DNA of 64,000 nucleotides, taken from positions 62,001 through 126,000 of IMG/VR virus record IMGVR_UViG_3300027793_000052; one strand, written 5' to 3'. How positions within the stretch are numbered: position 1 is the stretch's first letter; each line of letters begins with the position of its first letter. Of the stretch, positions 2,082 to 52,203 are shown one piece after another. The notes beneath the pieces were generated by a model. That model was not told where the DNA came from. It was given only the letters and a program-made list of their open reading frames with translations, and did not search any database. Both the position numbers and the translations under genes were made by a program.

Positions 2082-2636
2082 ATGAAATTTATATTAACCC
2101 TTATATTATCAGTAATAACCTTTATTGGTGTTTGTCAAACAAGGGTAACAGCCGTTATAATTAATGGTGATACCTTACCCTATGTTAAATTAAAACCTTT
2201 TATAATAAAGGAAAAGGGTAATTGGGGTGTATTTGTTTCTTGGGAACGTAGTCGTTTAGAAAAAAAAGTTAGAAAAGTTTTACCTTTGGTCAAGGTGCTA
2301 TCCCGAGAACTTAATAACAGAAAAGAAAACCTAAATTCTACAAATCCAATTATACGTAAAAAAGAACTTCATGAGATGGAAGTTTATTTAAAAAGTAATT
2401 ATGGTAAGACAATAAAAGATTTAACCATAAGTGAAGGTAAGGTATTATTAAAACTTATTCATAGAGAAAATGGTATGTCACCTTATGAAATTTTAAAAAT
2501 GTTAAAGGGTGAAAGAAAAGCAGAATTTTGGGATGGATTTGCAGGACTATTTGGCACAGATTTGGAATCCAAATGGGATCCTGAAGGTGAAGATAAAATG
2601 TTAAATCAAATTGTTATCAAAATAGAAAATGATTAA
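2082..2636 (+). CDS. DUF4294-family protein (Bacteroidota)
   Basis: signal peptide; GDTLPYVKL, LTISEGKVLLKLIHRE and FAGLFG..L...WDPEGED motifs. Confidence 0.75.
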   Translation: MKFILTLILSVITFIGVCQTRVTAVIINGDTLPYVKLKPFIIKEKGNWGVFVSWERSRLEKKVRKVLPLVKVLSRELNNRKENLNSTNPIIRKKELHEMEVYLKSNYGKTIKDLTISEGKVLLKLIHRENGMSPYEILKMLKGERKAEFWDGFAGLFGTDLESKWDPEGEDKMLNQIVIKIEND

Positions 2637-2859
2637 TTGGATAAAGCCCCAAGACAGATGGATAGAAGGTTATTATAACTCTATTAGACTTTATATACAT
2701 TTAACCAAAGAACAAAAAGTTGATGGTTTATATTTCATTGAAGGTAACCATAAAGAAAAGGTGGTACCTGAAGATGAACATGAGGCAGATATAGATTTTA
2801 TGAAATTGATGGCTGAATATATTATAAAAGAAAAATACATTAACAAATATGGAAATTAA
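2629..2859 (+). CDS. hypothetical protein
   Basis: ORF in operon. Confidence 0.6.
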   Translation: MINWIKPQDRWIEGYYNSIRLYIHLTKEQKVDGLYFIEGNHKEKVVPEDEHEADIDFMKLMAEYIIKEKYINKYGN

Positions 2860-3028
2860 TTTAAGAGGTAATTTTAACAACAAGGTAGTTGAAATTATGG
2901 ACATGGAATTTGGTAGGTTGGAGACAATTAAGTTACCCGTTATAACCAAGTTTAAAATTAAGGATGGTGCTGATGAAAAATGGGTTGACGCAAGTCTGGT
3001 TGTGATGTTGGAAAGGACTTTCAAATAA
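2849..3028 (+). CDS. small hypothetical protein (59 aa, not in track)
   Basis: ATG 2849 to TAA 3028, MEINLRGNF...ERTFK; fills the gap on the operon strand. Confidence 0.55.
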   Translation: MEINLRGNFNNKVVEIMDMEFGRLETIKLPVITKFKIKDGADEKWVDASLVVMLERTFK

Positions 3029-3062
3029 TTAAATCTTCACAATTCTGTGATATTTATATTAT

Positions 3063-3728
3063 GTGAGAAATCTTATTAAATCTATTTTAAAAGAAGAATA
3101 CGAAAGGGAACCACAAGTTGGTGATAATTTGTTATGCCACACTGTTACACCTGCTTTTGAACCTTATTTAACAGTAAATAAAACATATAGAGTAATTGAT
3201 GTAACATATTTTGATAATAGATTAGAGGTTTTAGTTATAAAAGACGATACTGGTATAAATCGAATGTTTACAATAAAACCAGTAATGGGGCATTCTTATA
3301 AAACATGGTTCCATTTATTAGATGATATTGATGATGAATATTTTTTTGAAAATATGTCGGAATCTGAAGAGGGTGATTTTGATTGGGTGGGTGATATCAT
3401 TGAAAAATCCAACATGTGGGAAACATTACCAAGAAATGGAAATTATATATTGTTTTATTTTTATCCAAAAATATCTTCAGAACAATTTAAAAAATATGTA
3501 ATCCCAATTTTATTAGAACAAGACATTAGAATTGAAAGTTCTGCGTCACGTAGTGGTATGGATCATCTAGAAATACATCCTAGTACACGTATACAATATA
3601 ATAATAAACTTGTTGCCTTGTTTGGTGATGTTGAATATTTCGATAAAGATGAAGAGGGATTTATTAAACAGTTATCAGAAGACGGTTCAACACCTATAAA
3701 CGGTAGAGAATTTTTTAACATACCTTAA
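3063..3728 (+). CDS. leader-bearing two-module protein (putative head-internal protein)
   Basis: GATATTTATA upstream; MRNLIKSILKEE leader; internal FFENMSE-SEEGDFDWVGDII linker. Confidence 0.7.
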   Translation: MRNLIKSILKEEYEREPQVGDNLLCHTVTPAFEPYLTVNKTYRVIDVTYFDNRLEVLVIKDDTGINRMFTIKPVMGHSYKTWFHLLDDIDDEYFFENMSESEEGDFDWVGDIIEKSNMWETLPRNGNYILFYFYPKISSEQFKKYVIPILLEQDIRIESSASRSGMDHLEIHPSTRIQYNNKLVALFGDVEYFDKDEEGFIKQLSEDGSTPINGREFFNIP

Positions 3729-3746
3729 ACAAATCTTTTAAAAACT

Positions 3747-3790
3747 AAAAACCCCCAATCTAATATTACATAGATGTGGGGGTTTTGTTT
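3747..3790. terminator. intrinsic terminator, probably bidirectional
   Basis: AAAAACCCCCAATCTA...TAGATGTGGGGGTTTT hairpin. Confidence 0.7.
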
Positions 3791-4010
3791 GCCGATAGAT
3801 TTATTCACATGAAAGGGAACCTTTGTTGACACCGTAAGGTAGGTGTGACAAGAGGGTTTTATCGATGTTATAATCGAGATCGGTCTTGTTTGTGTTTATA
3901 ACACGTGTTAAGGGAATCGGTGGCTTTTGGGTTAAGGTGCCGTGATCGTTGATTCCCGTGTGGATGATCAGTCCACTGATTAAACCTTGTGAGAGTGTGA
4001 AAGTTCTCCA
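3791..4010. ncRNA. candidate structured ncRNA A
   Basis: no ORF; ~43% GC; hairpins ACACC/GGTGT, GGGAATC/GATTCCC, GTGGA/TCCAC, TCGAT/ATCGA. Confidence 0.4.
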
Positions 4011-4049
4011 ATTTTTTTATTTTAACTATTGTGAAGTTTAATAAAAATA

Positions 4050-4305
4050 CTATGACCCGTTAAAAAAAGAACAACATCTTTGAACACCACGATTGCTTTT
4101 ACTTTCCCTGTTTTTAGAGAGGTTTCAGCCTGTGTCAGTCAATTATCGGTTTCACGATGGTTCAGGACTTAGCTTCCTCTGTGGTAAACATTTACAGTTT
4201 TTATGGTGTTACAGTTTTTATTTATGAGTGGTGTCATGTCGGATGGTCGTGTTACTCTTTACTCGGGAGATTTAGGACCTTTACTTTCCACTCATTCACT
4301 TCTTC
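4050..4305 (-). ncRNA. candidate structured ncRNA B
   Basis: no ORF; minus-strand TAACTTTG promoter at 4305-4312; inverted repeats 4224-4231/4288-4295, 4083-4089/4204-4210, 4118-4122/4176-4180. Confidence 0.45.
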
Positions 4306-4438
4306 AAAGTTAAACATTCTTTTTTAAACTATCAAGAGGTTTTTAAAAATTATTTTTTTTATTTTCCCCTTACCGTTATCAGGTTGTTTAACTTAACACA
4401 ACAAAGATATGTAATTTATTTCATACCGTCAACAAAAT
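4305..4438 (-). promoter_or_regulatory. two tandem minus-strand Bacteroidota-type promoters
   Basis: CAAAGTTA (4305-4312) and CAAAGATA (4402-4409) read TAnnTTTG on the minus strand; no ORF downstream. Confidence 0.5.
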
Positions 4439-4529
4439 CTTTGTTTTTTTTTTATTGTTGTGTTTTTATGTCAAATAACTTGTACAAATATATAAACAAT
4501 TTTTAACATAGACAAGATATTTATTGTAA

Positions 4530-5948
4530 ATGGAAAAAGAAATTTTAGATTTTATCTTTCAAAGTGGTGGTATTGGTTTACAGTTCTACAATCCTGAAGA
4601 ATATAATAATGAAGGTATTGTTTATACTATTATAGATTCTGATGAAAAGTATATTGATTTACAGTGGGAAGACGATGAAGAAATTTACTATAATAGTGAA
4701 CCTTGGCACGTTTTTTTATCACATTTAGAGAGTGGTTTTTATGTTATTAAAAATATGGATTTCTTATGCCAAACTATGGGTGTTGATTTAGATATTGATG
4801 ACGTTTTTGGTTCCTTAAATGAAAATGAATCGTCACATATAGTCGGTAATATAGAAAGATTATTACAAGAATGGAATTGGGTTGTGATGCCTGTGTCAGA
4901 CATCACAGAAGAACAGTTCCAAGAATTACAATTATATCTATACTCAAAAGGTATATATTGGCAAAGTGGTGGTGATGATGTTAGAAGTATGCCACCTGAT
5001 TTGGGTTGGATATATATCGGAAGATACCCGTATTATAATGGTAGGCCACCACATGCACAAAGAGCAACCATAGGTTGGACATTTTACCAAGATGGTATAT
5101 GGAGACCAGAAGAGGATCCAAGTTACGCTGAAGACTATAGATTATGGAATCCTAAATATAAAATAGTTAGTTATTACGATATTATTTTAGACGATGATGA
5201 TTTAGATATGGATGATGTTTTTGGTTCCTTGAATGAAGGAACTTATCAACCTATTTTAAATTTGAGGTTTGACCCACCATTGAGAAATGAATGGGAGTTA
5301 CTTGAAGTAATGAAAGTAATTCAAAGAAATTACGACGATGTCACTTGGCGGTCAGGAGGTATACCAACTAATTTACCTTATTTGGATCAGATATGGGAAG
5401 ATCCTTCAGAGGGTATTTGGTATATAACAATTGGTTTTTTTAAATCAAATCCGAAGAATATAACTTACACATCCGGTGATATAGATGACCCGTCTATATC
5501 AGATGAGGAACATCATATGTATAAACATTTAAATGGAAGAGAATGGGTTAGAAGTCACGACTTTGATGCGGATGAAACTAGTGATATGTTTGGTCCTTTA
5601 ATTGAGACGAATGAATTTGATTGGGTTGGTGATATAATTGATGATGATGCTAATAGATTTTCAAAAATACCAAGTTATAATCATGAAAGATATATATTAC
5701 GTTTTTCACAACCTATGCTTGCTAGTGATGTTATGGATTTATTAAAGTTTTTAAAAGAAATTGGTTGGGATGTTGGTGACAATATTGTGCGTGATTATAA
5801 TTTTGATGATTTAGTTGAATACTCTTCAAATGGAACTGGTTATATACATTTGAGGCCTAATGGTAAAGTTACTTATGCCGATGATGTTAAATTATTTTCA
5901 GATTATACCGACATTAAACTTGATACTGTCAGACAAATATGGGTATAG
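4530..5948 (+). CDS. four-module acidic protein (putative polyprotein)
   Basis: ATATTTAT upstream; linkers LDIDDVFGSLNE, LDMDDVFGSLNE, FDADETSDMFGPLIE. Confidence 0.75.
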   Translation: MEKEILDFIFQSGGIGLQFYNPEEYNNEGIVYTIIDSDEKYIDLQWEDDEEIYYNSEPWHVFLSHLESGFYVIKNMDFLCQTMGVDLDIDDVFGSLNENESSHIVGNIERLLQEWNWVVMPVSDITEEQFQELQLYLYSKGIYWQSGGDDVRSMPPDLGWIYIGRYPYYNGRPPHAQRATIGWTFYQDGIWRPEEDPSYAEDYRLWNPKYKIVSYYDIILDDDDLDMDDVFGSLNEGTYQPILNLRFDPPLRNEWELLEVMKVIQRNYDDVTWRSGGIPTNLPYLDQIWEDPSEGIWYITIGFFKSNPKNITYTSGDIDDPSISDEEHHMYKHLNGREWVRSHDFDADETSDMFGPLIETNEFDWVGDIIDDDANRFSKIPSYNHERYILRFSQPMLASDVMDLLKFLKEIGWDVGDNIVRDYNFDDLVEYSSNGTGYIHLRPNGKVTYADDVKLFSDYTDIKLDTVRQIWV

Positions 5949-29064: not shown

Positions 29065-29289
29065 TTAATAATTTAACATACTTTTATAAGGTAATTCACT
29101 AAAATCACAACCACTTAATTCTTTGTATTTAACTTTTAAACGACTTTTAAAGGTTTTATTATAAACCTGATAATCCATGTGTTTATCCAACCAAAACCCC
29201 AACATTCTTGCCGCACCTTTTAGTTGTTCGATAGTCTCACAACTATCTATAACATTCAATACTTTGTAGTAATCTTTCCAAATTTCCAT
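29065..29289 (-). CDS. hypothetical protein
   Basis: ORF in operon. Confidence 0.6.
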   Translation of the reverse strand: MEIWKDYYKVLNVIDSCETIEQLKGAARMLGFWLDKHMDYQVYNKTFKSRLKVKYKELSGCDFSELPYKSMLNY

Positions 29290-29759
29290 TATGATAAGAA
29301 TTTAATAATTTTTTCTTTAATACCTGTTTGTTTAATACCTTCCATGTCTTTTGGACAATGAACAAAATTATCTAAAGAGAACATCTTTAAATCATCCACC
29401 GCCACCCAATGGGTAACACCTAACTTTTCTTTGTTTTGTTTCAACCACAGGTTGATTTCAACAACTCTTCCACCCTCCAAATCAGAACCATTTGGTGTTG
29501 GTAATTCGGGTGTCATATCAAACGGTGCTTTAATAACACCATTAAACTCCATGAATATTTCTTTGATTTGGCCCAAACTGTAGTGGTATTTCCAATCGGA
29601 AGATAAAACCATTTCAGCCCCAGTTTCTTCTAGGATTTTATTTAAAACTTTTACAGCCTTTTTATCAAATGGGTATGCATTCCATTTGTTATCCTGTGAC
29701 ATATCCCAACAAGGGGCTGTCGCTAATACACCATCGATATCGATAAAAATTAATTTCAT
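29289..29759 (-). CDS. HAD domain protein, Swiss-Army-Knife RNA-repair type
   Basis: FIDIDGVL, VLSSDW, R..EI..WL, WVAVDD. Confidence 0.75.
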   Translation of the reverse strand: MKLIFIDIDGVLATAPCWDMSQDNKWNAYPFDKKAVKVLNKILEETGAEMVLSSDWKYHYSLGQIKEIFMEFNGVIKAPFDMTPELPTPNGSDLEGGRVVEINLWLKQNKEKLGVTHWVAVDDLKMFSLDNFVHCPKDMEGIKQTGIKEKIIKFLS

Positions 29760-29782
29760 GATTACAAATATAAGAATTTTTC

Positions 29783-30484
29783 TTACATATCTCTACCACT
29801 TTCAAAAATATGTTTTAAAACTGGGAACCTTAGACTTACACCACCTTCTTGATTTTGTGTTTCTTCAAAAAATTGTATAGTAGCCAATTTACCAACAATC
29901 TTTGACGGGTCCCTGAAAAATTCTTTACGTTGTTCAAGCGTAAAACCACTACCAACACCAACTTCATAACCTTTATGTTCGATAACAATTTGTGATGTCA
30001 TGGTTTCAGTAACTTCTTTACCATCCACCACGATACGAATTGGACCGTAATTAATTCCTTTAACAACGTATTCAGCATCATGAAAGTTTTTAGCTTTTAA
30101 TAAATCCTTACTACGTTTACCTTTATACCCAACATCTTTACGAACCATAACACCCTCCCAACCGTTGTTCTCAGCCTCATCTAACCATTTTTGAAAGTGT
30201 TGGATGTTTTCTACCTTTTCTTGGGGTAAAATTTCACAAGTACCCAAGAGGTGTGGGGCTTTATTTAATAAAACTTGTTCAAAAGCCACAAAATTACTGG
30301 ATAAAACTTCTAATCTTTTAGATAAATTACGTACACTAGTTTTGTTACTAAATTCTTCTAATGATAACATATCAAAAATTTTGTACTTTACATTATCAAT
30401 ACGGTGGTTTTTACGACGAATTTCTTTCATTATGTTAGTGAAATTCTCTGAATAATAACGTGTAATTTTTTTAATTTTTTTCAT
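29783..30484 (-). CDS. lig: ATP-dependent DNA ligase, C-terminal half (motifs IIIa, IV, V and OB domain)
   Basis: start re-assigned to ATG 30484 (MKKIKKITRYYSENF); KIFDML, WEGVMVR, KRSKDLLKAK, GVGSGF, SLRFP. Confidence 0.85.
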   Translation of the reverse strand: MKKIKKITRYYSENFTNIMKEIRRKNHRIDNVKYKIFDMLSLEEFSNKTSVRNLSKRLEVLSSNFVAFEQVLLNKAPHLLGTCEILPQEKVENIQHFQKWLDEAENNGWEGVMVRKDVGYKGKRSKDLLKAKNFHDAEYVVKGINYGPIRIVVDGKEVTETMTSQIVIEHKGYEVGVGSGFTLEQRKEFFRDPSKIVGKLATIQFFEETQNQEGGVSLRFPVLKHIFESGRDM

Positions 30485-31241
30485 ATTTCCAAATGTAATT
30501 TTTAAACTTATCTCGTCTACCCTTACAACAATCAATAACACCGTCCCTGGATATACCCAAGTCTTTTGTGATATCCCCACCACAGTCCCAAATTTTTACT
30601 AATTCACCGTTTAATGTGTATTGGCCTATCTTTTTCTTTTTTTTGGCTTGTGATAATAGTAATATTTTTTTATGTTCATCTGTTAGTTTAGACCCATATC
30701 TGGGGTTACCTTCACCTTTACGATTTTGAGAGTGTACGTTTTTGGATGACTCACTCCAAGAAGAACCCAAATTAAAACCCCTACCTTGGTTATTTTTAAT
30801 AGATTCCATTAAACTTTCTCTCATTTTATTAACCCTGTCCGGGTTATGTTTAACACCTAATAAAGATTTCCTTATTTTATCACCAAAACCAATTGGTTTT
30901 GGTTTTCGTAATTTATCTTTAGTTTCTTCAGTATGTTTTATATTATTTTTTAATTTTTCATATATTCTACTACTTATGTTATAATCTCTTTTTTGATTTT
31001 TATTGTTTAATTGGTTACTCATAGCCCAAAAGGCGAAAAACAATTTTTTTTCTTTTGGGTATATCTCACATAGTAATTGGTGGCACAAGTAATGTTCTCT
31101 TGCTGTTAAATAAACTAAATTTTCCTTTTCATCAGTACCACCCATACATTTAGGTATTATGTGGTGAAGTTCTTTATAAGATGTTAATTCTCTATTTTTA
31201 GCTCTATCTATTATTTGATAGTAAATTTTTTGATAATTCAT
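30471..31241 (-). mobile_element. free-standing HNH homing endonuclease with NUMOD-type C-terminus
   Basis: ELHHIIPKCMGG...NLVYLTAREHYLCH; IGQYTLNGELVKIW...IWKY; sits between the ligase halves. Confidence 0.85.
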
Positions 31242-31273
31242 AATTATAATGTATTATTATAAATATCATAAAA

Positions 31274-32065
31274 CTAATAACTTTCATTATAGTTTGAAAT
31301 TATATCGTCATCGTCAGTTAAATCACTAACTAATTTTATACCATTAGTTGTTTCTACCAAATCAGTGTTTTTATACCTCTCAACGGAACCGTCCTCAAAT
31401 TCTATTTCAACATATTCGTCAACCATACAGATTTCACCATCAAAAACTATGTTACTAAAGTTTAATTGTGATATCGCATCTTCCACTTTACCTAACGTGT
31501 CAAAAATCTTACCTTGTCTAGAAAAAGAAGTTACTTTACCGTTTTCATCTATCACAACAATACAACGTACACCATCCAATTTACGTGAAACAAACCAATC
31601 TTCTTTTTCAAAATCAACCATCTCAGGTTCAAACTTTTCTGCCAAAGCCACATCAAATGTTGGAATGGTTCCAGGAACCGCCTTATTAATTATGGATTCA
31701 CCAATACGACATTTAAGGTCTTTGTCTATTATATCATAAATAACTTCTTTATGTTCAATATTGGCAGCAATAAAAGAGTTAACAAGACCTATTGCGTTAT
31801 GTCCTGTAACTTCACGAGTACGCAATTCATCCAATAATTCAAATATGGTATAGTTTTTTTCTGTTAATGCCAAAATGGTTTCATTCTTTTTACAGTTATC
31901 TGATGTTATATGAAACTGATAGAATGGGTTATAAACATACATGAATAGTTTTTTTAATTCACTATCATGAAAATATTCTTTAATTAAACTGATTTTGTTG
32001 TTAGAAGATGAGTTAGATTGTAACCTATCAATCAACTCTTTTGTACGACCTAAAATATTTTTCAT
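31274..32065 (-). CDS. lig: ATP-dependent DNA ligase, N-terminal half (motifs I, III) plus 46-aa Hint-like tail
   Basis: SRKLDGVRC, SRQGK, FDGEI; TATATTTG upstream. Confidence 0.85.
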   Translation of the reverse strand: MKNILGRTKELIDRLQSNSSSNNKISLIKEYFHDSELKKLFMYVYNPFYQFHITSDNCKKNETILALTEKNYTIFELLDELRTREVTGHNAIGLVNSFIAANIEHKEVIYDIIDKDLKCRIGESIINKAVPGTIPTFDVALAEKFEPEMVDFEKEDWFVSRKLDGVRCIVVIDENGKVTSFSRQGKIFDTLGKVEDAISQLNFSNIVFDGEICMVDEYVEIEFEDGSVERYKNTDLVETTNGIKLVSDLTDDDDIISNYNESY

Positions 32066-32119
32066 ATCACAAATATAGTTATTATTTATTTAATACACAA
32101 AATATAGTAAAATTATTAT

Positions 32120-32533
32120 ATGAATGAAGAGTTAGAAAGTAAAATTAGGGGTATTGTTGGTTTATATAACTTTTACAAATACCATATGAACACACCACAA
32201 CGAGTTGGTTTACTAACTCTATGGATTGAAGTTAGTGTCAGCAAAGAGGAGTATGAGGTGGCAGATGTCCTACAAAAAGAATTAAATAAAATATTAAATG
32301 GTGAGGAAGAATATTTTTTAACCCCACCATCTAATATAACTTTTATACCCACAGATACCGATAATTTAAAAGATAAAATTTGGGATATAATGGGAAAACC
32401 CAAAAACAAACCTATTTTTAAACCTGAAAAAAAATTAAAATGGGTAAACTTATGGGGTACTGGTAAGTTTAAGTTGATAGATATATCTCTTAATACTTTT
32501 ATTATTTTTAATTTCGGTGTTGAATTTAGTTAA
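32120..32533 (+). CDS. hypothetical protein with UVR-like motif
   Basis: KEEYEVADVLQKELNKI. Confidence 0.55.
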   Translation: MNEELESKIRGIVGLYNFYKYHMNTPQRVGLLTLWIEVSVSKEEYEVADVLQKELNKILNGEEEYFLTPPSNITFIPTDTDNLKDKIWDIMGKPKNKPIFKPEKKLKWVNLWGTGKFKLIDISLNTFIIFNFGVEFS

Positions 32534-33278: not shown

Positions 33279-34178
33279 TCAAGAAACAATCAAAGTGTTA
33301 AAATTTTTACGATATTCTAATACTGATAATTCTTTGGCTTTGGACTCAAACATTAAATCTAAATTATGACCATATGTATTAACTTCATTACGTACATAAT
33401 CATGATGTGCTCTAACATTTTTATTATCACGTGGTTCCGATACATGAACAACAGGTGTAATACCTTCAGGCCATGTAGATATGGCCAATTCTAAAGCTTC
33501 TTTAGTAGACATACCATCATTATGACAATTGTGGTGATGATAATCAAATACAATAGGAACACCTGTATGTTCGTGTACATACATAAGGTCAGCTACTGTA
33601 AACATATTGGGTTTATCATCGTTTTCGATTGTAAGACGGGATTTGGCGGTGTCACCGAGTAAATGAAAATTATCCACCCAACGTTTAAGTGCATCGGACT
33701 TATTACCATAAGCACCACCAACATGAATATTAATTTTAGAAAAAGGTGTTTTAGGTAAACCAATCATATCCATTATTTCAGAATGACGATTAAGTTCTGC
33801 AACAGTTTTAGTAATAACGTCTTGATTTGGTGAGGCTAGAACATTAAAAGGTCCGGGGTGAAAACCAACTCGATGGTTATATTGTTCGATAAGATTACCT
33901 AAACCTGTCATTATATTTTTAATTTTAACAATATCGGGTAAATTATCAAAACTATATTCACTTGACCATGGAAACATATCCGAACTCATACGATAAAGTG
34001 TGATATTGTGTTTTTCATTCCATTTAATAACCTCAACAAGGTCACGAACATTTTGTAAAGAAAGTTCAGAGGCATAAGGTAAACCTTTATTCTGAAAAGT
34101 TTTTTTAATCATACCACGATTAGTAGTAATACCTTGTTCCCCCAAGGTCATATTAATACAAGCATATCCAATTCTCAT
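33279..34178 (-). CDS. uvsE: UV DNA damage endonuclease
   Basis: MRIGYACIN, LYRMSSDMFPW, FHPGPFNVL, INIHVGG, RLTIENDD, PIVFDYHHH, AHHDY. Confidence 0.9.
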   Translation of the reverse strand: MRIGYACINMTLGEQGITTNRGMIKKTFQNKGLPYASELSLQNVRDLVEVIKWNEKHNITLYRMSSDMFPWSSEYSFDNLPDIVKIKNIMTGLGNLIEQYNHRVGFHPGPFNVLASPNQDVITKTVAELNRHSEIMDMIGLPKTPFSKINIHVGGAYGNKSDALKRWVDNFHLLGDTAKSRLTIENDDKPNMFTVADLMYVHEHTGVPIVFDYHHHNCHNDGMSTKEALELAISTWPEGITPVVHVSEPRDNKNVRAHHDYVRNEVNTYGHNLDLMFESKAKELSVLEYRKNFNTLIVS

Positions 34179-45182: not shown

Positions 45183-46889
45183 TTAATCACCCCACACCCA
45201 TTTTTTATTACCACAATCCCAAATAATGTTGTAACCACGTTCATACATTATTTGTTTTTCAGTCTTATTCGGATCATAACCATCTTTAATTAATTTATCT
45301 TTCCTAAAATTATATCTGTGCATTCTAACCAAGTCTTTGAAATACCAATAATTTAATTCGGTATTTTTTAAAAATTTAAAGCCCAATTTTTCATATAAAC
45401 CACCATCAAAATACCTGTTATCGGAATAAGATACGACATTTTTTGGTTTATAATTTTGTATGAAATGTCCGAACAATTTTGAAGCCCCACCAACTATTTT
45501 TGTGTTTAATTTATTACAAAATCTTAACATCTCATATTCATAATTGTTGTTACCCACACCTGAACGATTACCGAATGTCATAACAGAAACCAATTCGTCT
45601 TTATAATATAAACCCAAATTTATAGACGCGTTAACAGACCCTTGAATGTGGTTATTACCCAAAAATTTCGATGATTCTTTATTGGTTATTGTTTTTATAA
45701 CACACTTTCTTGCGAATATATTGGTATCGAATATGTTTAAATTAGCTTTTATAATAGATAATACAATATCTTTTTTAAATAACCACTCATCTTCAAAAAT
45801 ATGTAATAGTTTAATATTTTTATCTTTACATAATAACGTCTTATTTATGTGATATGTTTTACTTTTATTTATTTCACTATGCCAATACAATCCATCATAT
45901 TCTATGGCTAAATTTTTCTGCGGTATGAAAATATCCAATTCACAACCACCGAGTATCTTTTTATTATTAATCTCAACTAACATCCCAGTCAAATTCTCTA
46001 TATAACTAACAATATCTCTATGTGGTTTGGTGTAGTTTGATCCGTTAAGTGGGAAACAATTGATGCATATTTCATACCCCAACCTATTTCTTTGATTAAA
46101 TAAATAATTGTCTATTTTAAAAATTTTGTCACATTTATCACATTTTAATGTTAATACTTTATTTTCGTAATCAATAAAAGTATACCCACTGAAATTATTT
46201 AATTTATCTATTATTTTGTTTTTAAAAATCACATTTTTAAACTCTTCACTTTGTGAGTAGTTCTCTACATTAAATTTTGTTAAATTAGTTTTTTTAGATT
46301 TTTCTTTAACTTCTTCTAACTGAAAAGGGTTTGATACGCCGTATTTTTTAATAAGATTCTCTTTTCTTAAATTCTTTATATCGTCAGAATACCAATGGTG
46401 GGTAAAACCGTATCTTTCTAAATTAGTTTTTTTTACTTTATTTTTTATTTCATCATTATGTAAACTACATGTTACACCATACTTTTCTAAATTAGTTTTT
46501 TTTACTTTATTTTTTATTTCATCATTTCTTAAAGGACTTGTTACACCATATTTTTTTACATTAGTTTCCTTTATTTTATTTTTAGTATTTTGGTTATTTA
46601 CACCACATTTTATAGAACAGTTTTTATTATAACCCTTTTTTAGTGAGATAAATTTCACATCATTTACCCCACAAACCTCACATTTAGGTGGTTTGTTAGT
46701 ATTATTTATATATAAATAAATTTTCTCTTTAAAAGTTAAGCTGTCTTCTTTATTGAAGTTTATTATTTTTGAGTATAAATCGTAGTTATTGTCCCGTAAC
46801 CAACTTTCTCTAACCCTAAGACCGTTATTATTTTCAGTAAAATAATCCAGTAAATTTATATTATCCATATTGTATGACTTATTTATCAA
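45183..46889 (-). mobile_element. Hef-like / Vsr-type homing endonuclease
   Basis: KTNLEKYG repeats; ELDIFIP..NLAIEYDGLYWHS; FARKC; GGASKLF; IWDCG. Confidence 0.75.
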
Positions 46890-49680: not shown

Positions 49681-52203
49681 TTACTCACTTTTATCTTCTT
49701 TCTTTTTAGAAGATTTAGGTTTTTTAATTGTAACCTTAATGTCTTCGATTTTGGTATCGTAAGATATTGTTACAATATCACCTAATGAGATGTCACCGTC
49801 TAAGACTTTTTCCGCGACAGGATCTTCAACGTATTTTTGAATGGCTCTGTTAAGTGGACGTGCTCCATATTTTTCGTCATAACCTTTTTCAATCAAATAC
49901 TCTTTTAAAGTATCATCTAATTTAAGAGTATAACCCATTTCTTTCACACGTTCAATTACATCATTAAGTGGGATATCGACAATTTTACCAATTTCTTCCT
50001 TACCTAAAGATTTGAAAACAATAACGTCATCAAGACGATTTAAAAATTCAGGTGAAAATGCCTTTTTAAGGGAGTCCTGAATAACATTTTCAGAATCATC
50101 ATCAATTCTATCAAGTTTAGCTTTGGTACCATACCCTACACCAGTACCAAATTCTTGTAGTTTACGAGCTCCTACGTTTGATGTCATAATGATTAAACAG
50201 TTTTTAAAATCAACCTTACGACCTAAACCATCACTTAAATGACCATCATCAAAAACTTGTAAAAGAATGTTGAAAACGTCTGGGTGTGCTTTTTCTACCT
50301 CATCCAATAAGATAACAGAAAAAGGTTTTCTTCTGATTTTTTCGGTTAATTGACCACCTTCTTCGTACCCAACATATCCTGGAGGAGCTCCAATCAGTTT
50401 AGATACTGAATGTTTTTCCATGTATTCCGACATATCAACACGAATTAAAGCGTCAGTTGAACCAAAAATACTTTGAGCCAACATTTTAGCCAAATAAGTT
50501 TTACCAACACCAGTAGGACCTAAAAACATAAAAGAACCAATTGGTTTGTTTTTGTTTTTAATACCTATTCTATTACGTTTAATAGCTTTGGTAATCTTAT
50601 CGATAGCGGAATCCTGACCAATAACTTTTTCTTTAATCTCTTTATCCATGGTACGGAGTTTTTCGGTTTCTGTTTGACCTACTTTGGTTACAGGTATACC
50701 AGTTACCATAGATACGACTTTTGCTACGTCATCTTCTGACACAACAGGTCTTGATTTATCCAAAGATTTTGACCACTCGTTAGTTGCGTTTTCTAACTCA
50801 TCTTGTAATTTCTTTTCTTCATCACGAAGTTTTGCTGCGTCTTCATAACGTTGAGCCTTCACTACATCGATTTTTTGTTGACCTATTTCGGAAATTTTTT
50901 CTTCCAAATCCATAATATTTTTTGGTGGTTTGATGTGAACTTGTAGTCTTGCACCAACCTCATCCATAATATCAATAGCTTTGTCAGGTTGTTCACGGTC
51001 ATTAATATAACGGTCAGCTAAATTAACGCAGGCTTCAATAGCTTCGGTTGTATAATTAACCTTGTGATGGTCTTCGTATTTATTCTTAATATTGTTAAGA
51101 ATAATCAAAGTTTCATCTTTTGACGGCGGTTCAACAAGTACCATTTGAAAACGTCTAGCTAAAGCTCCGTCTTTTTCTATGTTTTCACGATACTCATCAA
51201 GAGTTGTAGCCCCAATACATTGTATTTCACCCCTCGCTAAAGCTGGTTTAAGAATGTTAGAAGCGTCCAATGAACCTGAAGCGTTACCGGCTCCAACCAT
51301 AGTATGAATTTCATCTATGAATAAGATAACATCGTCAGCTTTTTCTAATTCCTGCATGATACCTTTCATTCTTTCTTCAAATTGTCCACGGTATTTAGTT
51401 CCAGCAACTAAAGACGCTAAGTCCAAACTAACCACACGTTTATCAAAAAGAATACGAGGACATTTTCTTTCAACAATCTTAAGAGCAAGTCCTTCGACTA
51501 TTGCTGTTTTACCTACACCTGGTTCCCCAATCAAAATCGGATTGTTCTTTTTACGTCTTGAAAGAATTTGTGAAACCCTTTCAATTTCATCTGCTCTACC
51601 AATAATTGGGTCTATTTGACCGTCAGAGGCTAGTTTAGTAATATCCCTACCAAAGTTATCTAAGATAGGTGTTGTTGACTTACCCTGTGAAGCTTTTTTA
51701 GCTTTCTTACCGTAGTCTTCAATTTCTTCAAAATCTCCTGTCATATTAATTATTTTTTGTTCTTTTAAATTTAATAAAGTTTCTTTAAAAGTTCTATAGG
51801 TTATACCCTGATTTCCTAAAACTTTTGTTCCATCTAATGTACGATTTTTAAGTATTGATAAAACAATGTGTTCAACATTTATTGTATCATCCTTTAATTT
51901 ATCTGATTCCAATTCAGCCGAACTTAAGGCGTGTTTGGAGGATTCACTTAAGGGAACTATTTTTACTTCTACAATATTAGGGTTTTTTATTTTAAGTCTC
52001 AAGTAGCCTTCCAATTTTTCCATTAAATCTGTTACATCTGAACCCATTTCTTTAAAAACATCAACCGCACCATTTTCTTTATCATTAAAAACTGCTAATA
52101 ATATGTGTTCAGGTTTAATTTTGTTGTCATTAAGTCTAATTGATTCCTTAAAAGCACTTTTAAGAATACCTTTTAATTTAGGTGTCATTTTTTTCATCAT
52201 CAA
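49681..52203 (-). CDS. clpC: ATP-dependent Clp protease ATPase subunit (ClpC-type)
   Basis: Clp-N repeats; GEPGVGKT; UVR motif [13 protein letters not shown]; GPTGVGKT; GARPL.RAIQ. Confidence 0.9.

What the first reader, a model, noticed from the sequence alone, without database searches (positions are those of the whole stretch)
29783..32065. DNA ligase fractured by an HNH gene, halves carrying a catalytically dead mini split-intein-like clamp
Seen: the ligase is cut between motif III (FDGEICMVDE) and motif IIIa, so the adenylation site must be assembled from two polypeptides. The N-half gains a 46-aa tail (31274-31414: YVEIEFEDGSVERYKNTDLVETTNGIKLVSDLTDDDDII...). The C-half starts at its own ATG (30484, overlapping the HNH stop) with MKKIKKITRYYS before the ligase sequence resumes at ENFTNIMKEIRRK. 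The gap is entirely coding or promoter sequence, leaving no room for a group I/II intron core. Recalled from memory: the tail aligns with the end of split-intein N-halves (Npu DnaE-N EYCLEDGSLIRATKDHKFMTVDG) and the leader with the first strand of C-halves (DnaE-C MIKIATRKY). However, the TxxH is replaced by KNTD, blocks F and G (HN-C/S/T) are missing, and the only candidate N-terminal Cys (EICM) appears to belong to the ligase. Inference: a remnant Hint subdomain serves as a non-splicing heterodimerisation module that lets an essential enzyme tolerate homing-endonuclease insertion. This differs from spliced fractured genes and from the adaptor-free Aeh1 nrdA/mobE split.
Basis: partly seen in the sequence, partly recalled or inferred. 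Interest (0 to 1): 0.87.

Follow-up and report, generated by a model that had tools for sequence, protein, structure and literature searches.

The report
Split ligase held by dead half-intein
A jumbo-phage DNA ligase gene is cut in two by a MobE-like homing-endonuclease gene, and the cut ends carry truncated, catalytically dead split-intein pieces that most likely hold the two halves together without splicing.

Summary
On the minus strand lie a ligase N-half (32065-31274), a MobE-like HNH gene (31241-30471) and a ligase C-half (30484-29783). A near-identical phage contig carries the unbroken 441-aa ligase. The insert is 966 nt and replaces three codons in the loop after motif III. Flanking mismatches cluster beside it, as expected after homing.

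The 46-aa tail is homologous to the last ~43 positions of genuine split-intein N-halves, which occur at motif I in relatives of this ligase. Support: an HMM of 17 genuine N-inteins (31 bits, E 1.6e-7), hhalign (94%, E 1e-7), and an AlphaFold model of the tail whose top 24 PDB matches are all inteins.

The 12-aa leader resembles the first strand of C-inteins (empirical p about 0.006) and has the opposite charge (+5 against -10). Cys1, block A, the block B Thr and His, and blocks F and G are absent, so splicing is not expected. No intron was found.

Similar mini-tails end fragments of family-B polymerase, Pol III alpha and a helicase. One Pol III alpha carries a contiguous copy.

The clamp function is inferred, not shown. 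Its tails are essential, and an intein origin was speculated in 2011 without sequence evidence.

The parts
31415..32065 (-). Ligase N-half, ligase portion (residues 1-217). Contains the N-terminal helical domain, motif I (KLDG, Lys162) and motif III (FDGEI).
   Evidence: Pfam DNA_ligase_A_M profile positions 11-90. 100% identical (BLASTP) to the intact ligase P0001. Invariant K162, D164, G165, D209 and E211 in alignment A4.
31277..31414 (-). 46-aa acidic tail (net charge -10), a truncated N-intein. It corresponds to the last ~43 positions of genuine split-intein N-halves (about Npu DnaE-N residues 55-102). The block B Thr and His are replaced by Lys and Asp.
   Evidence: HMM of 17 genuine IntN: hmm positions 52-94 of 95, 31.3 bits, domain E 1.6e-7. 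hhalign against ligase IntN: probability 94.3%, E 1e-7. A tail-only profile finds the C-termini of genuine IntN in 1.84 billion proteins. AlphaFold model pLDDT 84.5, and its top 24 Foldseek PDB hits are all inteins. Charge.
31274..31276 (-). TAG stop codon of the N-half.
31242..31273 (-). 32-nt AT-rich spacer before the HNH gene. The HNH ATG is in a different frame from the N-half, so stop-codon read-through cannot fuse the two. The spacer is partly conserved in L005 and may hold the endonuclease gene's own promoter.
   Evidence: Sequence and the L005 spacer. Spacer lengths are 32 nt here and 46 nt in L005, so the frame is not conserved. The promoter role is inference only: the sigma-70 scan is not above shuffles.
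30471..31241 (-). Free-standing HNH homing-endonuclease gene of the MobE type (256 aa). HNH motif at the N-terminus, NUMOD3/NUMOD1/I-TevI-like DNA-binding region at the C-terminus.
   Evidence: Pfam HNH, NUMOD1, I-TevI_DNA-bd and NUMOD3, all weak. DNA similarity of 73-75% to T-even mobE. 53% aa identity to Aeh1 MobE over 87 residues, E 2e-27. 51% identical to the L001 homologue.
30471..30484 (-). 14-nt overlap between the HNH stop and the ATG of the C-half (ATGnnnnnnnnTAA layout). It suggests translational coupling.
   Evidence: The same 14-nt overlap occurs in L001, L096 and Aeh1 mobE/nrdA-B.
30449..30484 (-). 12-aa basic leader MKKIKKITRYYS (net charge +5). It resembles the first beta-strand of C-inteins (for example the KIKKIT and KIKSI starts of genuine IntC).
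   Evidence: A PSSM of 11 genuine IntC first strands was scored against 1,121 N-termini of ATG-start ORFs. Genuine IntCs took ranks 1-4, the L001 leader rank 5 and the window leader rank 7. The IntC HMM gives only 10.4 bits, E 0.5, for L001. Charge.
29783..30448 (-). Ligase C-half, ligase portion. Contains motifs IIIa, IV (EGVMVRK) and V (LLKAK) and the OB domain.
   Evidence: Pfam DNA_ligase_A_M positions 93-204 and DNA_ligase_OB_2. 99.5% DNA identity to the intact allele from 30433 downstream.
31415..31475 (-). Left co-conversion or immunity tract. 8 of the 12 mismatches in 1,579 aligned nt fall here, plus three synonymous changes in the last three codons.
30361..30448 (-). Right co-conversion or immunity tract. 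All 7 mismatches in 1,432 aligned nt lie within 73 nt of the junction. The first five ligase codons of the C-half are diverged (ENFTN here, DDFQG in the intact allele).

Best explanation
A MobE-type HNH homing-endonuclease cassette has inserted into the Asn-Gly turn after motif III of an ATP-dependent DNA ligase in a jumbo phage of about 318 kb. The nucleotidyltransferase domain is now made as two polypeptides.

The cassette carries, fused in frame to the two cut ends, exactly the parts of a split intein that flank the endonuclease gene in 'fractured genes'. These are the last ~43 residues of an N-intein (the block B region with its long acidic strand) and the first ~10 residues of a C-intein (the long basic strand). 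The catalytic parts are gone: Cys1 and block A, the block B Thr and His, and blocks F and G with the terminal His-Asn.

Proposed mechanism:
1. The two genes are translated separately. The C-half is probably translationally coupled to the HNH gene through the 14-nt overlap.
2. The acidic tail and the basic leader find each other by electrostatic steering, as split inteins do in the 'capture' step.
3. They zip into an antiparallel beta-sheet that rebuilds part of a Hint domain.
4. This places the end of the N-half next to the start of the C-half, replacing the lost turn and restoring the adenylation site without any peptide-bond formation.

A plausible origin: an endonuclease gene that sat between split-intein halves moved to an ectopic site and took its immediate flanks with it.

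Shown: the architecture, the empty site, the homing signature, the homology and predicted fold of the tail, and the absence of splicing residues.
Inferred: tail-leader pairing, the need for the pair, the activity of the split ligase, and the origin.
For: Architecture and clean split.

Intact allele in a near-identical genome, with mismatches clustered within about 55-75 nt of the insert.

The same cassette sits at the same site (within two residues) in four ligase lineages that are 46-70% identical. All ORFs present on the contigs are intact. Synonymous sites are saturated (pS 0.58-0.86), yet the tail keeps 40% aa identity across the three lineages compared.

Genuine split inteins exist in the same ligase family at motif I: L086, L087, L089 and L091.

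Homology of the tail to genuine IntN:
- 35.8 bits against L091.
- The reverse HMM of 17 genuine IntN gives 31.3 bits over hmm 52-94.
- hhalign gives 94.3% probability.
- The ligase IntN profile hits solved inteins: Npu DnaE, DnaB and NrdJ-1.
- The tail-only profile retrieves IntN C-termini of RNR, dUTPase, Pol III alpha, PhoH-like and ligase split inteins from 1.84 billion proteins.

Fold: pLDDT 84.5, and the top 24 PDB hits are all inteins. The best is 6rix: probability 0.99, TM-score (query-normalised) 0.68, rmsd 1.4 A over 38 columns.

Leader similarity and charge complementarity: -10/+5 in the window, -4/+3 in L001, as in genuine relatives.

A contiguous tail-plus-leader insertion inside an unsplit stretch of Pol III alpha (P0212) shows that the two pieces can exist as one unit.

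Literature:
- The opposite-charged long interface strands of split inteins (PMC2677866).
- The capture-and-collapse mechanism (PMC11766414).
- Essential insertion-derived tails in Aeh1 NrdA (PMC3045599).
Against: There is no experimental or multimer-model evidence that the tail and leader bind each other, or that the split ligase is active.

The leader is too short for a significant HMM hit (10.4 bits, E 0.5 for L001; none for the window).

With the N-half modelled alone, only two tail strands form at pLDDT 50-63, and the rest is below 30.

The tail evolves faster than the ligase and the HNH gene (pN 0.42-0.45 against 0.22-0.41). dN/dS is unreliable because of saturation, and one pair gave 1.5.

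Foldseek E-values are above 0.1 because the query is only 46 residues.

In Aeh1 the tails were not needed for heterodimer formation, only for higher-order assembly and activity. The role here could therefore be subtler than a clamp.

Only four ligase lineages carry the cassette. Most relatives are intact: 76 of 80 viral loci showed no tail.
Confidence: 0.62

Rival explanations
1. Passive remnant. The tail and leader are leftovers of a degenerate split intein, or of DNA co-transferred with the endonuclease gene, and have no assembly role. The ligase halves either associate through their own large interface, or the split ligase is dead and another ligase substitutes.
For: Many proteins tolerate loop fission without adaptors. 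The tail evolves faster than the neighbouring genes. Split alleles are rare among relatives. In Aeh1 the tails were dispensable for heterodimer formation. Only 64 kb of a genome of about 318 kb was examined, so a second ligase cannot be excluded.
Against: Tail sequence, length, charge and Hint-like structural residues persist across lineages whose synonymous sites are saturated. The leader's KIKKIT motif and the 14-nt overlap are conserved. Both ligase halves keep all catalytic motifs and intact ORFs in all four lineages. Similar mini-tails recur on other fractured replication genes.
Confidence: 0.25
2. The tail has a different function, unrelated to joining the halves. For example it might bind DNA, bind a replisome partner, or regulate the endonuclease.
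For: The first hairpin motif (EIEFEDGS-like) also occurs in Tudor domains and in a repeat protein. The tail alone is predicted to fold.
Against: Over its full length the tail matches only N-intein C-termini. It always sits at the exact break point and is paired with an oppositely charged leader. It occurs with unrelated intervening genes (HNH, DUF7487-like, a possibly GIY-YIG-like ORF), so it is not tied to one nuclease.
Confidence: 0.07
3. A novel minimal split intein that still performs protein trans-splicing and yields a covalent ligase.
For: The module derives from a splicing family. A Cys lies four residues before the tail, and a Ser or Thr precedes the resumed ligase sequence in three alleles.
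Against: That Cys is part of the ligase itself and is present in intact alleles. The first tail residue is Y, D, F or T, so it is not conserved. There is no block A. The block B Thr and His are replaced. There is no block F or G and no terminal His-Asn. About 55 N-terminal and 25 C-terminal intein residues are missing.
Confidence: 0.03
4. An RNA-level solution: a group I or II intron carrying the HNH ORF is spliced out, and the tail is merely read-through into the intron.
For: HNH genes are common in phage group I introns. About 170 nt lie between the end of ligase homology and the HNH ATG.
Against: A permissive Rfam scan found no intron. The tail is conserved as protein and is homologous to inteins. 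The C-half has its own conserved ATG overlapping the HNH stop in three lineages. Only about 36 nt follow the HNH stop region before ligase sequence resumes.
Confidence: 0.02

Closest known systems
Aeromonas phage Aeh1 NrdA-a / MobE / NrdA-b (Friedrich 2007; Crona et al. 2011, PMC3045599)
   Same: An essential replication-related enzyme is split within its catalytic domain by a free-standing MobE-type HNH gene. The N-terminal 87 aa of that HNH protein are 53% identical to the window HNH. The 14-nt overlap of the HEG stop with the C-half ATG is identical. Both have insertion-derived tails of opposite charge on the two halves. In Aeh1 the tails are experimentally essential, and the authors speculated an intein origin.
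   Different: The host enzyme differs (RNR against DNA ligase). The charge polarity is reversed: the Aeh1 N-half tail is basic and its leader acidic. The Aeh1 tails show no detectable similarity to the tail, IntN or IntC HMMs used here, and the authors also found no database matches. Here the intein origin is demonstrable.
Fractured genes with genuine split inteins and free-standing endonuclease genes (Dassa et al. 2009, PMC2677866). Ligase examples found here: L086, L087, L091.
   Same: The gene order is host N-part, then endonuclease gene, then host C-part, in phage replication genes including DNA ligase. The endonuclease gene's end overlaps the start of the C-part. The long interface strands are acidic on the IntN side and basic on the IntC side. 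The tail and leader are homologous to the corresponding parts.
   Different: Genuine cases have complete IntN (91-112 aa with Cys1) and IntC (36-40 aa ending His-Asn, followed by Cys) and sit at motif I (KLDG|C). They carry a DUF7487/Vsr-like nuclease. The window module keeps only about 43 + 10 residues, has no catalytic residues, sits in the loop after motif III, and flanks an HNH gene.
Naturally split inteins such as Npu/Ssp DnaE, gp41-1 and NrdJ-1
   Same: The tail aligns to Npu DnaE-N at about residues 55-102. The tail model superposes on intein structures. Charge-driven association of the two parts is the established first step of assembly.
   Different: There is no splicing chemistry here, and half of the Hint domain is missing.
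T4 topoisomerase gp39/gp60 split by mobA, and other adaptor-less split phage genes
   Same: A gene fragmented by a mobile endonuclease gene, with short extensions of opposite charge noted by Crona et al..
   Different: No homology or function has been shown for those extensions. They were not examined here.

Membership tests
Protein-splicing intein (Hint domain, class 1) | Nucleophile (Cys/Ser/Thr) at intein position 1, with block A | tested here: not met
   The tail starts with Y, D, F or T in the four alleles and lacks the first ~51 HMM positions of IntN. The nearby Cys belongs to the ligase and is present in intact alleles.
Protein-splicing intein (Hint domain, class 1) | Block B Thr-x-x-His | tested here: not met
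   The aligned positions are K..D in the window and H..D or K..D in other alleles. Some genuine relatives (L089, L091) already have Asp in place of His.
Protein-splicing intein (Hint domain, class 1) | Blocks F and G ending in (His)-Asn, followed by a +1 Cys/Ser/Thr | tested here: not met
   The leader is 12 aa and ligase sequence follows directly. The IntC HMM matches at most positions 1-15, and only in L001.
Protein-splicing intein (Hint domain, class 1) | Homology to, and fold of, the Hint domain | tested here: met
   Met for the retained part only. IntN HMM 31.3 bits, E 1.6e-7. hhalign 94.3%. Foldseek top 24 hits are all inteins.
Fractured gene with split intein (Dassa 2009) | Host gene halves flanking a free-standing endonuclease gene | tested here: met
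Fractured gene with split intein (Dassa 2009) | Each half carries a complete, splicing-competent intein part | tested here: not met
   See the intein rows above. Complete parts are present in relatives L086, L087, L089 and L091.
MobE-fragmented gene with assembly tails (Aeh1 NrdA type) | MobE-family HNH gene between the halves, its stop overlapping the C-half start | tested here: met
   53% identity to Aeh1 MobE and the same 14-nt overlap.
MobE-fragmented gene with assembly tails (Aeh1 NrdA type) | Insertion-derived tails of opposite charge on the two halves | tested here: met
   Both are absent from the intact allele. Net charges are -10 and +5. The polarity is opposite to Aeh1.
MobE-fragmented gene with assembly tails (Aeh1 NrdA type) | Tails required for enzyme activity or assembly | not testable with these tools
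   This needs co-expression and nick-sealing assays. The tools take only sequences encoded unchanged in the window or in fetched loci, one chain at a time, so the two halves could not be modelled together.
MobE-fragmented gene with assembly tails (Aeh1 NrdA type) | Sequence relatedness of the tails to the Aeh1 tails | tested here: not met
ATP-dependent DNA ligase (nucleotidyltransferase + OB) | Motifs I, III, IIIa, IV and V and the OB domain all present | tested here: met
   They are distributed over two ORFs. The intact allele is a single 441-aa protein.
Group I / group II intron | Conserved catalytic RNA core | tested here: not met
   Rfam scan at E-value up to 10 over 29500-32300, both strands: no intron family. 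The model may tolerate a large ORF insertion poorly, but the protein-level evidence also argues against an intron.

The most novel reading that the evidence does not exclude
Tail plus leader define a natural family of non-catalytic 'half-Hint' zipper modules of about 40 + 10 residues. They derive from the endonuclease-proximal ends of split inteins and travel with homing-endonuclease genes. They make fission of essential replication genes phenotypically neutral by non-covalent reassembly. Candidate hosts are DNA ligase, family-B polymerase, Pol III alpha and a helicase. Contiguous copies survive as loop insertions. This would supply the missing sequence link for the 2011 speculation about the Aeh1 tails. 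It would also provide small, naturally evolved heterodimerisation tags.
Probability: 0.5. Interest if true: 0.85.

Novelty: new variant of a known kind. Interest (0 to 1): 0.78.

Why it matters
Homing endonucleases usually need an intron or intein to avoid killing the gene they invade. The Aeh1 RNR showed a third solution: tails that reassemble the fragments. Their origin stayed speculative because no homologues could be found.

Here the appendages can be traced by sequence and predicted fold to the association half of a split intein, stripped of its chemistry. Genuine split inteins in the same ligase family serve as a reference.

If the pair does bind, three things follow:
- It documents how a selfish element can carry its own 'antidote'.
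- It shows that part of a Hint domain can be kept for association alone.
- It offers compact natural protein-association modules, with related variants on other enzymes that might prove orthogonal.

It also warns annotators that short ligase or polymerase ORFs next to endonuclease genes may be functional subunits rather than pseudogenes.

Tried and rejected
- A word-index search restricted to the tail found nothing.
- The tail profile against PDB sequences gave only weak Tudor and PDZ hits (best E 0.13) and no intein. Pfam gave nothing for the tails. Direct sequence-to-library tests therefore fail. Homology only appears through genuine IntN of the same phage gene pool.
- The tail HMM against 80 loci with related HNH genes (viral contigs) found the tail only at ligase loci, so it is not a general companion of this HNH family.
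- Scans of viral contigs with the ligase alignment, and of metagenome contigs with the HNH alignment, added no new split alleles.
- tblastn of the tail against 50,697 phage records gave one marginal hit. It turned out to be a genuine terminase split intein in Streptococcus phage GXN1.
- The Aeh1 tails show no similarity to my HMMs. One wasted search and two region fetches were needed to locate Aeh1 nrdA.
- dN/dS is uninformative because synonymous sites are saturated.
- AlphaFold of the N-half alone left most of the tail at low confidence.
- The capture-and-collapse paper itself (PMC3865799) is not held, so the review was cited instead.
- Intron, read-through fusion and minimal trans-splicing were considered and rejected, as detailed under the rival explanations.
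Full report
**1. What is in the sequence**

On the minus strand of the window there are three consecutive ORFs.
- 32065-31274 encodes 263 aa.
- 31241-30471 encodes 256 aa.
- 30484-29783, starting from the ATG at 30484, encodes 233 aa.

Pfam puts DNA_ligase_A_M profile positions 11-90 on residues 146-222 of the first ORF. It puts positions 93-204, followed by DNA_ligase_OB_2, on the third ORF. The middle ORF gives weak HNH, NUMOD1, NUMOD3 and I-TevI DNA-binding matches.

The first ORF ends with 46 residues that are not ligase (window 31414-31277). The third ORF begins with 12 residues that are not ligase (30484-30449). The ATG of the third ORF lies 11 nt upstream of the HNH stop codon, giving a 14-nt overlap.

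**2. The empty site and the homing signature**

The protein search with the N-half returned P0001, a single 441-aa ligase that is 100% identical (BLASTP) to the ligase part of the N-half. Its contig (L004) has the same neighbouring genes. It aligns to the window at 99.2% on the left and 99.5% on the right of the insertion.

Codon by codon, the window carries 966 nt (31414-30449) where the intact allele has the three codons for Asn-Gly-Val. These 966 nt comprise the tail, the stop, a 32-nt spacer, the HNH gene and the leader.

The mismatches are strongly clustered.
- On the left, 8 of 12 lie in the last 55 aligned nt, and the last three codons carry further synonymous changes.
- On the right, all 7 lie in the first 73 nt, and the first five ligase residues of the C-half differ (ENFTN here, DDFQG in the intact allele).

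This is the pattern expected from homing with short co-conversion tracts from a diverged donor, or from target-site immunity.

The HNH gene is of the MobE type.
- Its 5' part is 73-75% identical at the DNA level to T-even mobE.
- Its first 87 residues are 53% identical to Aeh1 MobE.

**3. The arrangement is conserved, so it is not a recent wreck**

Three more ligase lineages carry a homologous tail and HNH gene at the same site, within two residues.
- L005: 70% aa identity to the N-half. The contig ends inside the HNH gene.
- L001-L003: 46% identity. The full cassette is present, with the same 14-nt overlap.
- L096: the HNH gene and the overlap are present, but a scaffold gap interrupts the leader.

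The HNH proteins are 51-66% identical.

Between the three lineages compared (window, L001, L096), synonymous sites are saturated (pS 0.58-0.86). Even so, all ORFs are intact and the ligase motifs are conserved. The tail keeps 40% identity, with invariant Glu, Gly, Thr, Gly, Thr and Asp positions. Formal dN/dS is unreliable at this divergence. The argument for constraint on the tail therefore rests on retained identity and structure-related positions, not on a ratio.

Split alleles are a minority. Of the 80 best ligase loci in viral contigs, only the window's own contigs and the L001 contig have the tail.

**4. Not an intron, not a read-through fusion**

A permissive Rfam scan of 29500-32300 found no group I or II intron. 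The HNH ATG is out of frame with the N-half, and the spacer length is not conserved (32 nt here, 46 nt in L005). Stop-codon read-through therefore cannot fuse them. The tail is conserved as a protein, and the C-half has its own conserved start.

**5. What the tail is**

Direct library searches with the tail fail.
- Pfam gives nothing.
- A tail profile against PDB sequences gives only weak Tudor and PDZ hits through the generic EFEDGS hairpin.

The decisive lead came from the C-half search. Many relatives of this ligase are fractured by genuine split inteins at a different site, motif I. Their loci (L086, L087/88, L091) have three parts:
- an N-half ending in a complete N-intein of 101-106 aa that starts with Cys directly after KLDG;
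- a DUF7487 gene, probably the Vsr-like family of Dassa et al.;
- a C-half starting with a 36-40-aa C-intein that ends in His-Asn, followed by Cys.

L089 has the two intein-bearing halves without an endonuclease gene between them.

Several independent tests then link the tail to these N-inteins.
- The three-sequence tail HMM matches the extreme C-terminus of the L091 N-intein at 35.8 bits (domain E 4.6e-9 among 15,089 six-frame ORFs).
- In reverse, an HMM built only from 17 genuine N-inteins (95 positions) matches the window tail over positions 52-94 at 31.3 bits (E 1.6e-7). It matches the L001 tail at 35.3 bits.
- Profile-profile comparison gives 94.3% probability and E 1e-7, with tail positions 2-40 aligned to IntN columns 63-103.
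- The ligase IntN profile in turn hits solved inteins: Npu DnaE 4qfq (E 6e-5), DnaB and NrdJ-1.
- In that alignment the tail corresponds to Npu DnaE-N residues about 55-102. The block B Thr69 and His72 positions are occupied by Lys and Asp.
- The tail-only profile was run against 1.84 billion representative proteins. It returned 27 hits at E up to 1e-3, almost all at the extreme C-terminus of the hit protein.
- An AlphaFold model of the tail alone, built from an alignment of eight mini-tails, has mean pLDDT 84.5 and five strands.
- Foldseek against the PDB puts inteins in all of the first 24 places. The best is MchDnaB-1 6rix: probability 0.99, query-normalised TM-score 0.68, rmsd 1.4 A over 38 columns. 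Npu DnaE and gp41-1 are also among them. The E-values (0.28 and above) are weak because the query has only 46 residues. The evidence is the exclusivity of the hit list.

**6. What the leader is**

Twelve residues are too few for a significant HMM hit. The IntC HMM gives 10.4 bits (E 0.5) for L001 and nothing for the window.

A composition-matched test is more telling. A PSSM of the first strand of 11 genuine C-inteins was scored against the first 20 residues of 1,121 ATG-start ORFs from the same AT-rich loci. The four genuine C-inteins ranked 1-4, the L001 leader 5th and the window leader 7th.

The motif VKIKKIT in the L001 leader is identical to the start of an RNR C-intein (P0228). KIKKIT is shared by the window leader.

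The charges are complementary.
- The window tail is -10 and its leader +5.
- L001 is -4 and +3.
- Genuine relatives show the same polarity.

This matches the opposite-charged long antiparallel interface strands described for split inteins (PMC2677866). It also matches the electrostatic capture step of their assembly (PMC11766414).

**7. What is missing**

Compared with the genuine relatives, the module lacks several parts.
- About the first 51 HMM positions of the N-intein, including Cys1 and block A.
- The block B Thr and His.
- The last ~25 residues of the C-intein, that is blocks F and G with the terminal His-Asn.

The Cys four residues before the tail is a ligase residue, present in intact alleles. 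Canonical splicing is therefore not possible.

The retained pieces are exactly the two that flank the endonuclease gene in a fractured gene. This suggests an origin, which is inference only: an endonuclease gene moved to an ectopic site and carried its immediate flanks with it.

**8. A wider family**

The hits of the tail profile fall into two groups.
- Complete N-inteins of split RNR, dUTPase, Pol III alpha, PhoH-like and motif-I ligase genes.
- Mini-tails of about 40 aa with no preceding N-intein part. These end fragments of family-B DNA polymerase (P0210/L092, P0223/L095), Pol III alpha (P0213, P0216/L094, P0219), a DEAD-type helicase (P0217/L093) and a fourth ligase allele (P0214/L096).

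The genuine-IntN HMM hits these mini-tails only over its last ~40-50 positions, at 24-36 bits.

The genes that follow them differ: DUF7487-like zinc-finger ORFs, a possibly GIY-YIG-like ORF (judged by eye only) and a methyltransferase-like ORF. The mini-tail is therefore not tied to the HNH family.

One Pol III alpha fragment (P0212) contains an internal in-frame insertion of about 46 residues between the two halves of the Pfam DNA_pol3_alpha match. It reads like a tail followed directly by a leader-like strand. The same protein also ends in a second mini-tail. This contiguous copy indicates that tail and leader can form one unit that fits into a loop. That requires its two ends to be close together, as in the proposed antiparallel pairing.

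**9. Mechanism proposed**

The two ligase polypeptides are made separately. The acidic tail and the basic leader associate and form a beta-sheet equivalent to the retained part of the Hint fold. This replaces the Asn-Gly turn after the motif III strand and holds motifs I and III (N-half) against IIIa, IV and V (C-half).
- Shown: the anatomy, the homology, the predicted fold, the lack of catalytic residues, the conservation and the charges.
- Inferred: binding, necessity and ligase activity.

With the N-half modelled alone, AlphaFold leaves most of the tail at low confidence. This is compatible with a partner-dependent fold but proves nothing.

**10. Comparison with what is known**

The closest precedent is phage Aeh1 NrdA, split by mobE. 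[quoted passage not shown] The tails were not needed for heterodimer formation. The authors found no database matches and speculated about a degenerate split intein (PMC3045599).

I located the locus. It has the same 14-nt overlap and a related MobE. However, its tails have the opposite charge polarity and give no hit to my tail, IntN or IntC models.

The present case is a new variant of that known kind, and the first I could find in which the intein origin of such tails is demonstrable. Literature searches found no description of truncated intein remnants used in this way.

**11. Verdict**

The functional part is plausible but untested. The novelty claim has to be narrowed. I rate interest at 0.78: it turns a 15-year-old speculation into a directly testable case and hints at a family of natural half-Hint association modules.

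Noticed in passing
P0212 (protein), residues about 409-455 and 656-692: This Pol III alpha N-part has an internal, in-frame, contiguous tail-plus-leader-like insertion of about 46 aa between ERFMSPSR and SLPDIDVDF. It also ends in a second mini-tail. It would be the ideal single-chain test of tail-leader pairing.
   Followed up: partly
L092:426-2294 and 2876-2941; L095:935-1543 and 2558-3325: Family-B DNA polymerases are split just before motif C, and the N-part carries a mini-tail. The start of the L092 C-part reads GADTNNTF where YGDTDS would be expected. The L095 C-part shows no DTDS at all. The polymerases may be inactive, or motif C may be encoded elsewhere.
   Followed up: no
window 45183-46889 (-): A 568-aa ORF with a DUF7487 domain (E 3.6e-22) and a Mom-like domain. 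DUF7487 is the family of the endonuclease genes that sit between genuine split-intein ligase halves.
   Followed up: no
window 49681-52203 (-): An 840-aa ClpB/ClpA-like double AAA+ chaperone (AAA_2 E 1.7e-70) encoded by the phage.
   Followed up: no
window 33279-34178 (-) and 29289-29759 (-): Neighbours of the ligase: a UvdE-like UV-damage endonuclease and a HAD_SAK_2 phosphatase. The Pfam hits are on the near-identical genes in the same positions on contig L004. This suggests a small DNA-repair cluster.
   Followed up: no
L089:3971-4798 and 5001-5894: A genuine split-intein ligase whose two halves are separated by only about 200 nt, with no endonuclease gene. This may be a post-HEG-loss state.
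   Followed up: no
L098 (Streptococcus phage vB_SagM-GXN1, PQ819873.1, 120478-127600), ORFs 2100-4706 and 4687-5061: An unannotated large ORF that starts with a C-intein. It contains an N-intein that continues into a long C-terminal extension, which by eye may be Vsr-like. It is followed by a separate ORF that starts with a C-intein (KIRKIT...). The record annotates nothing here. The host gene was not identified.
   Followed up: partly
L099 (Aeh1 NC_005260), record 166804-167830: Aeh1 RNA ligase 2 is annotated as two adjacent genes, rnlB-A and rnlB-B. This is another split ligase-family gene in the phage whose NrdA is split.
   Followed up: no
P0208 (protein): A 483-aa protein with eight tandem repeats that each carry an IE[VI]TFEDGS hairpin motif. 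It was the top hit of the tail profile but is not an intein. This shows that the first hairpin alone is a generic motif.
   Followed up: partly
L028-type genuine IntN in L089 and L091: Two otherwise complete ligase split inteins have Asp in place of the block B His (ITGND). The mini-tails share this state, which hints at the sub-lineage they derive from.
   Followed up: no
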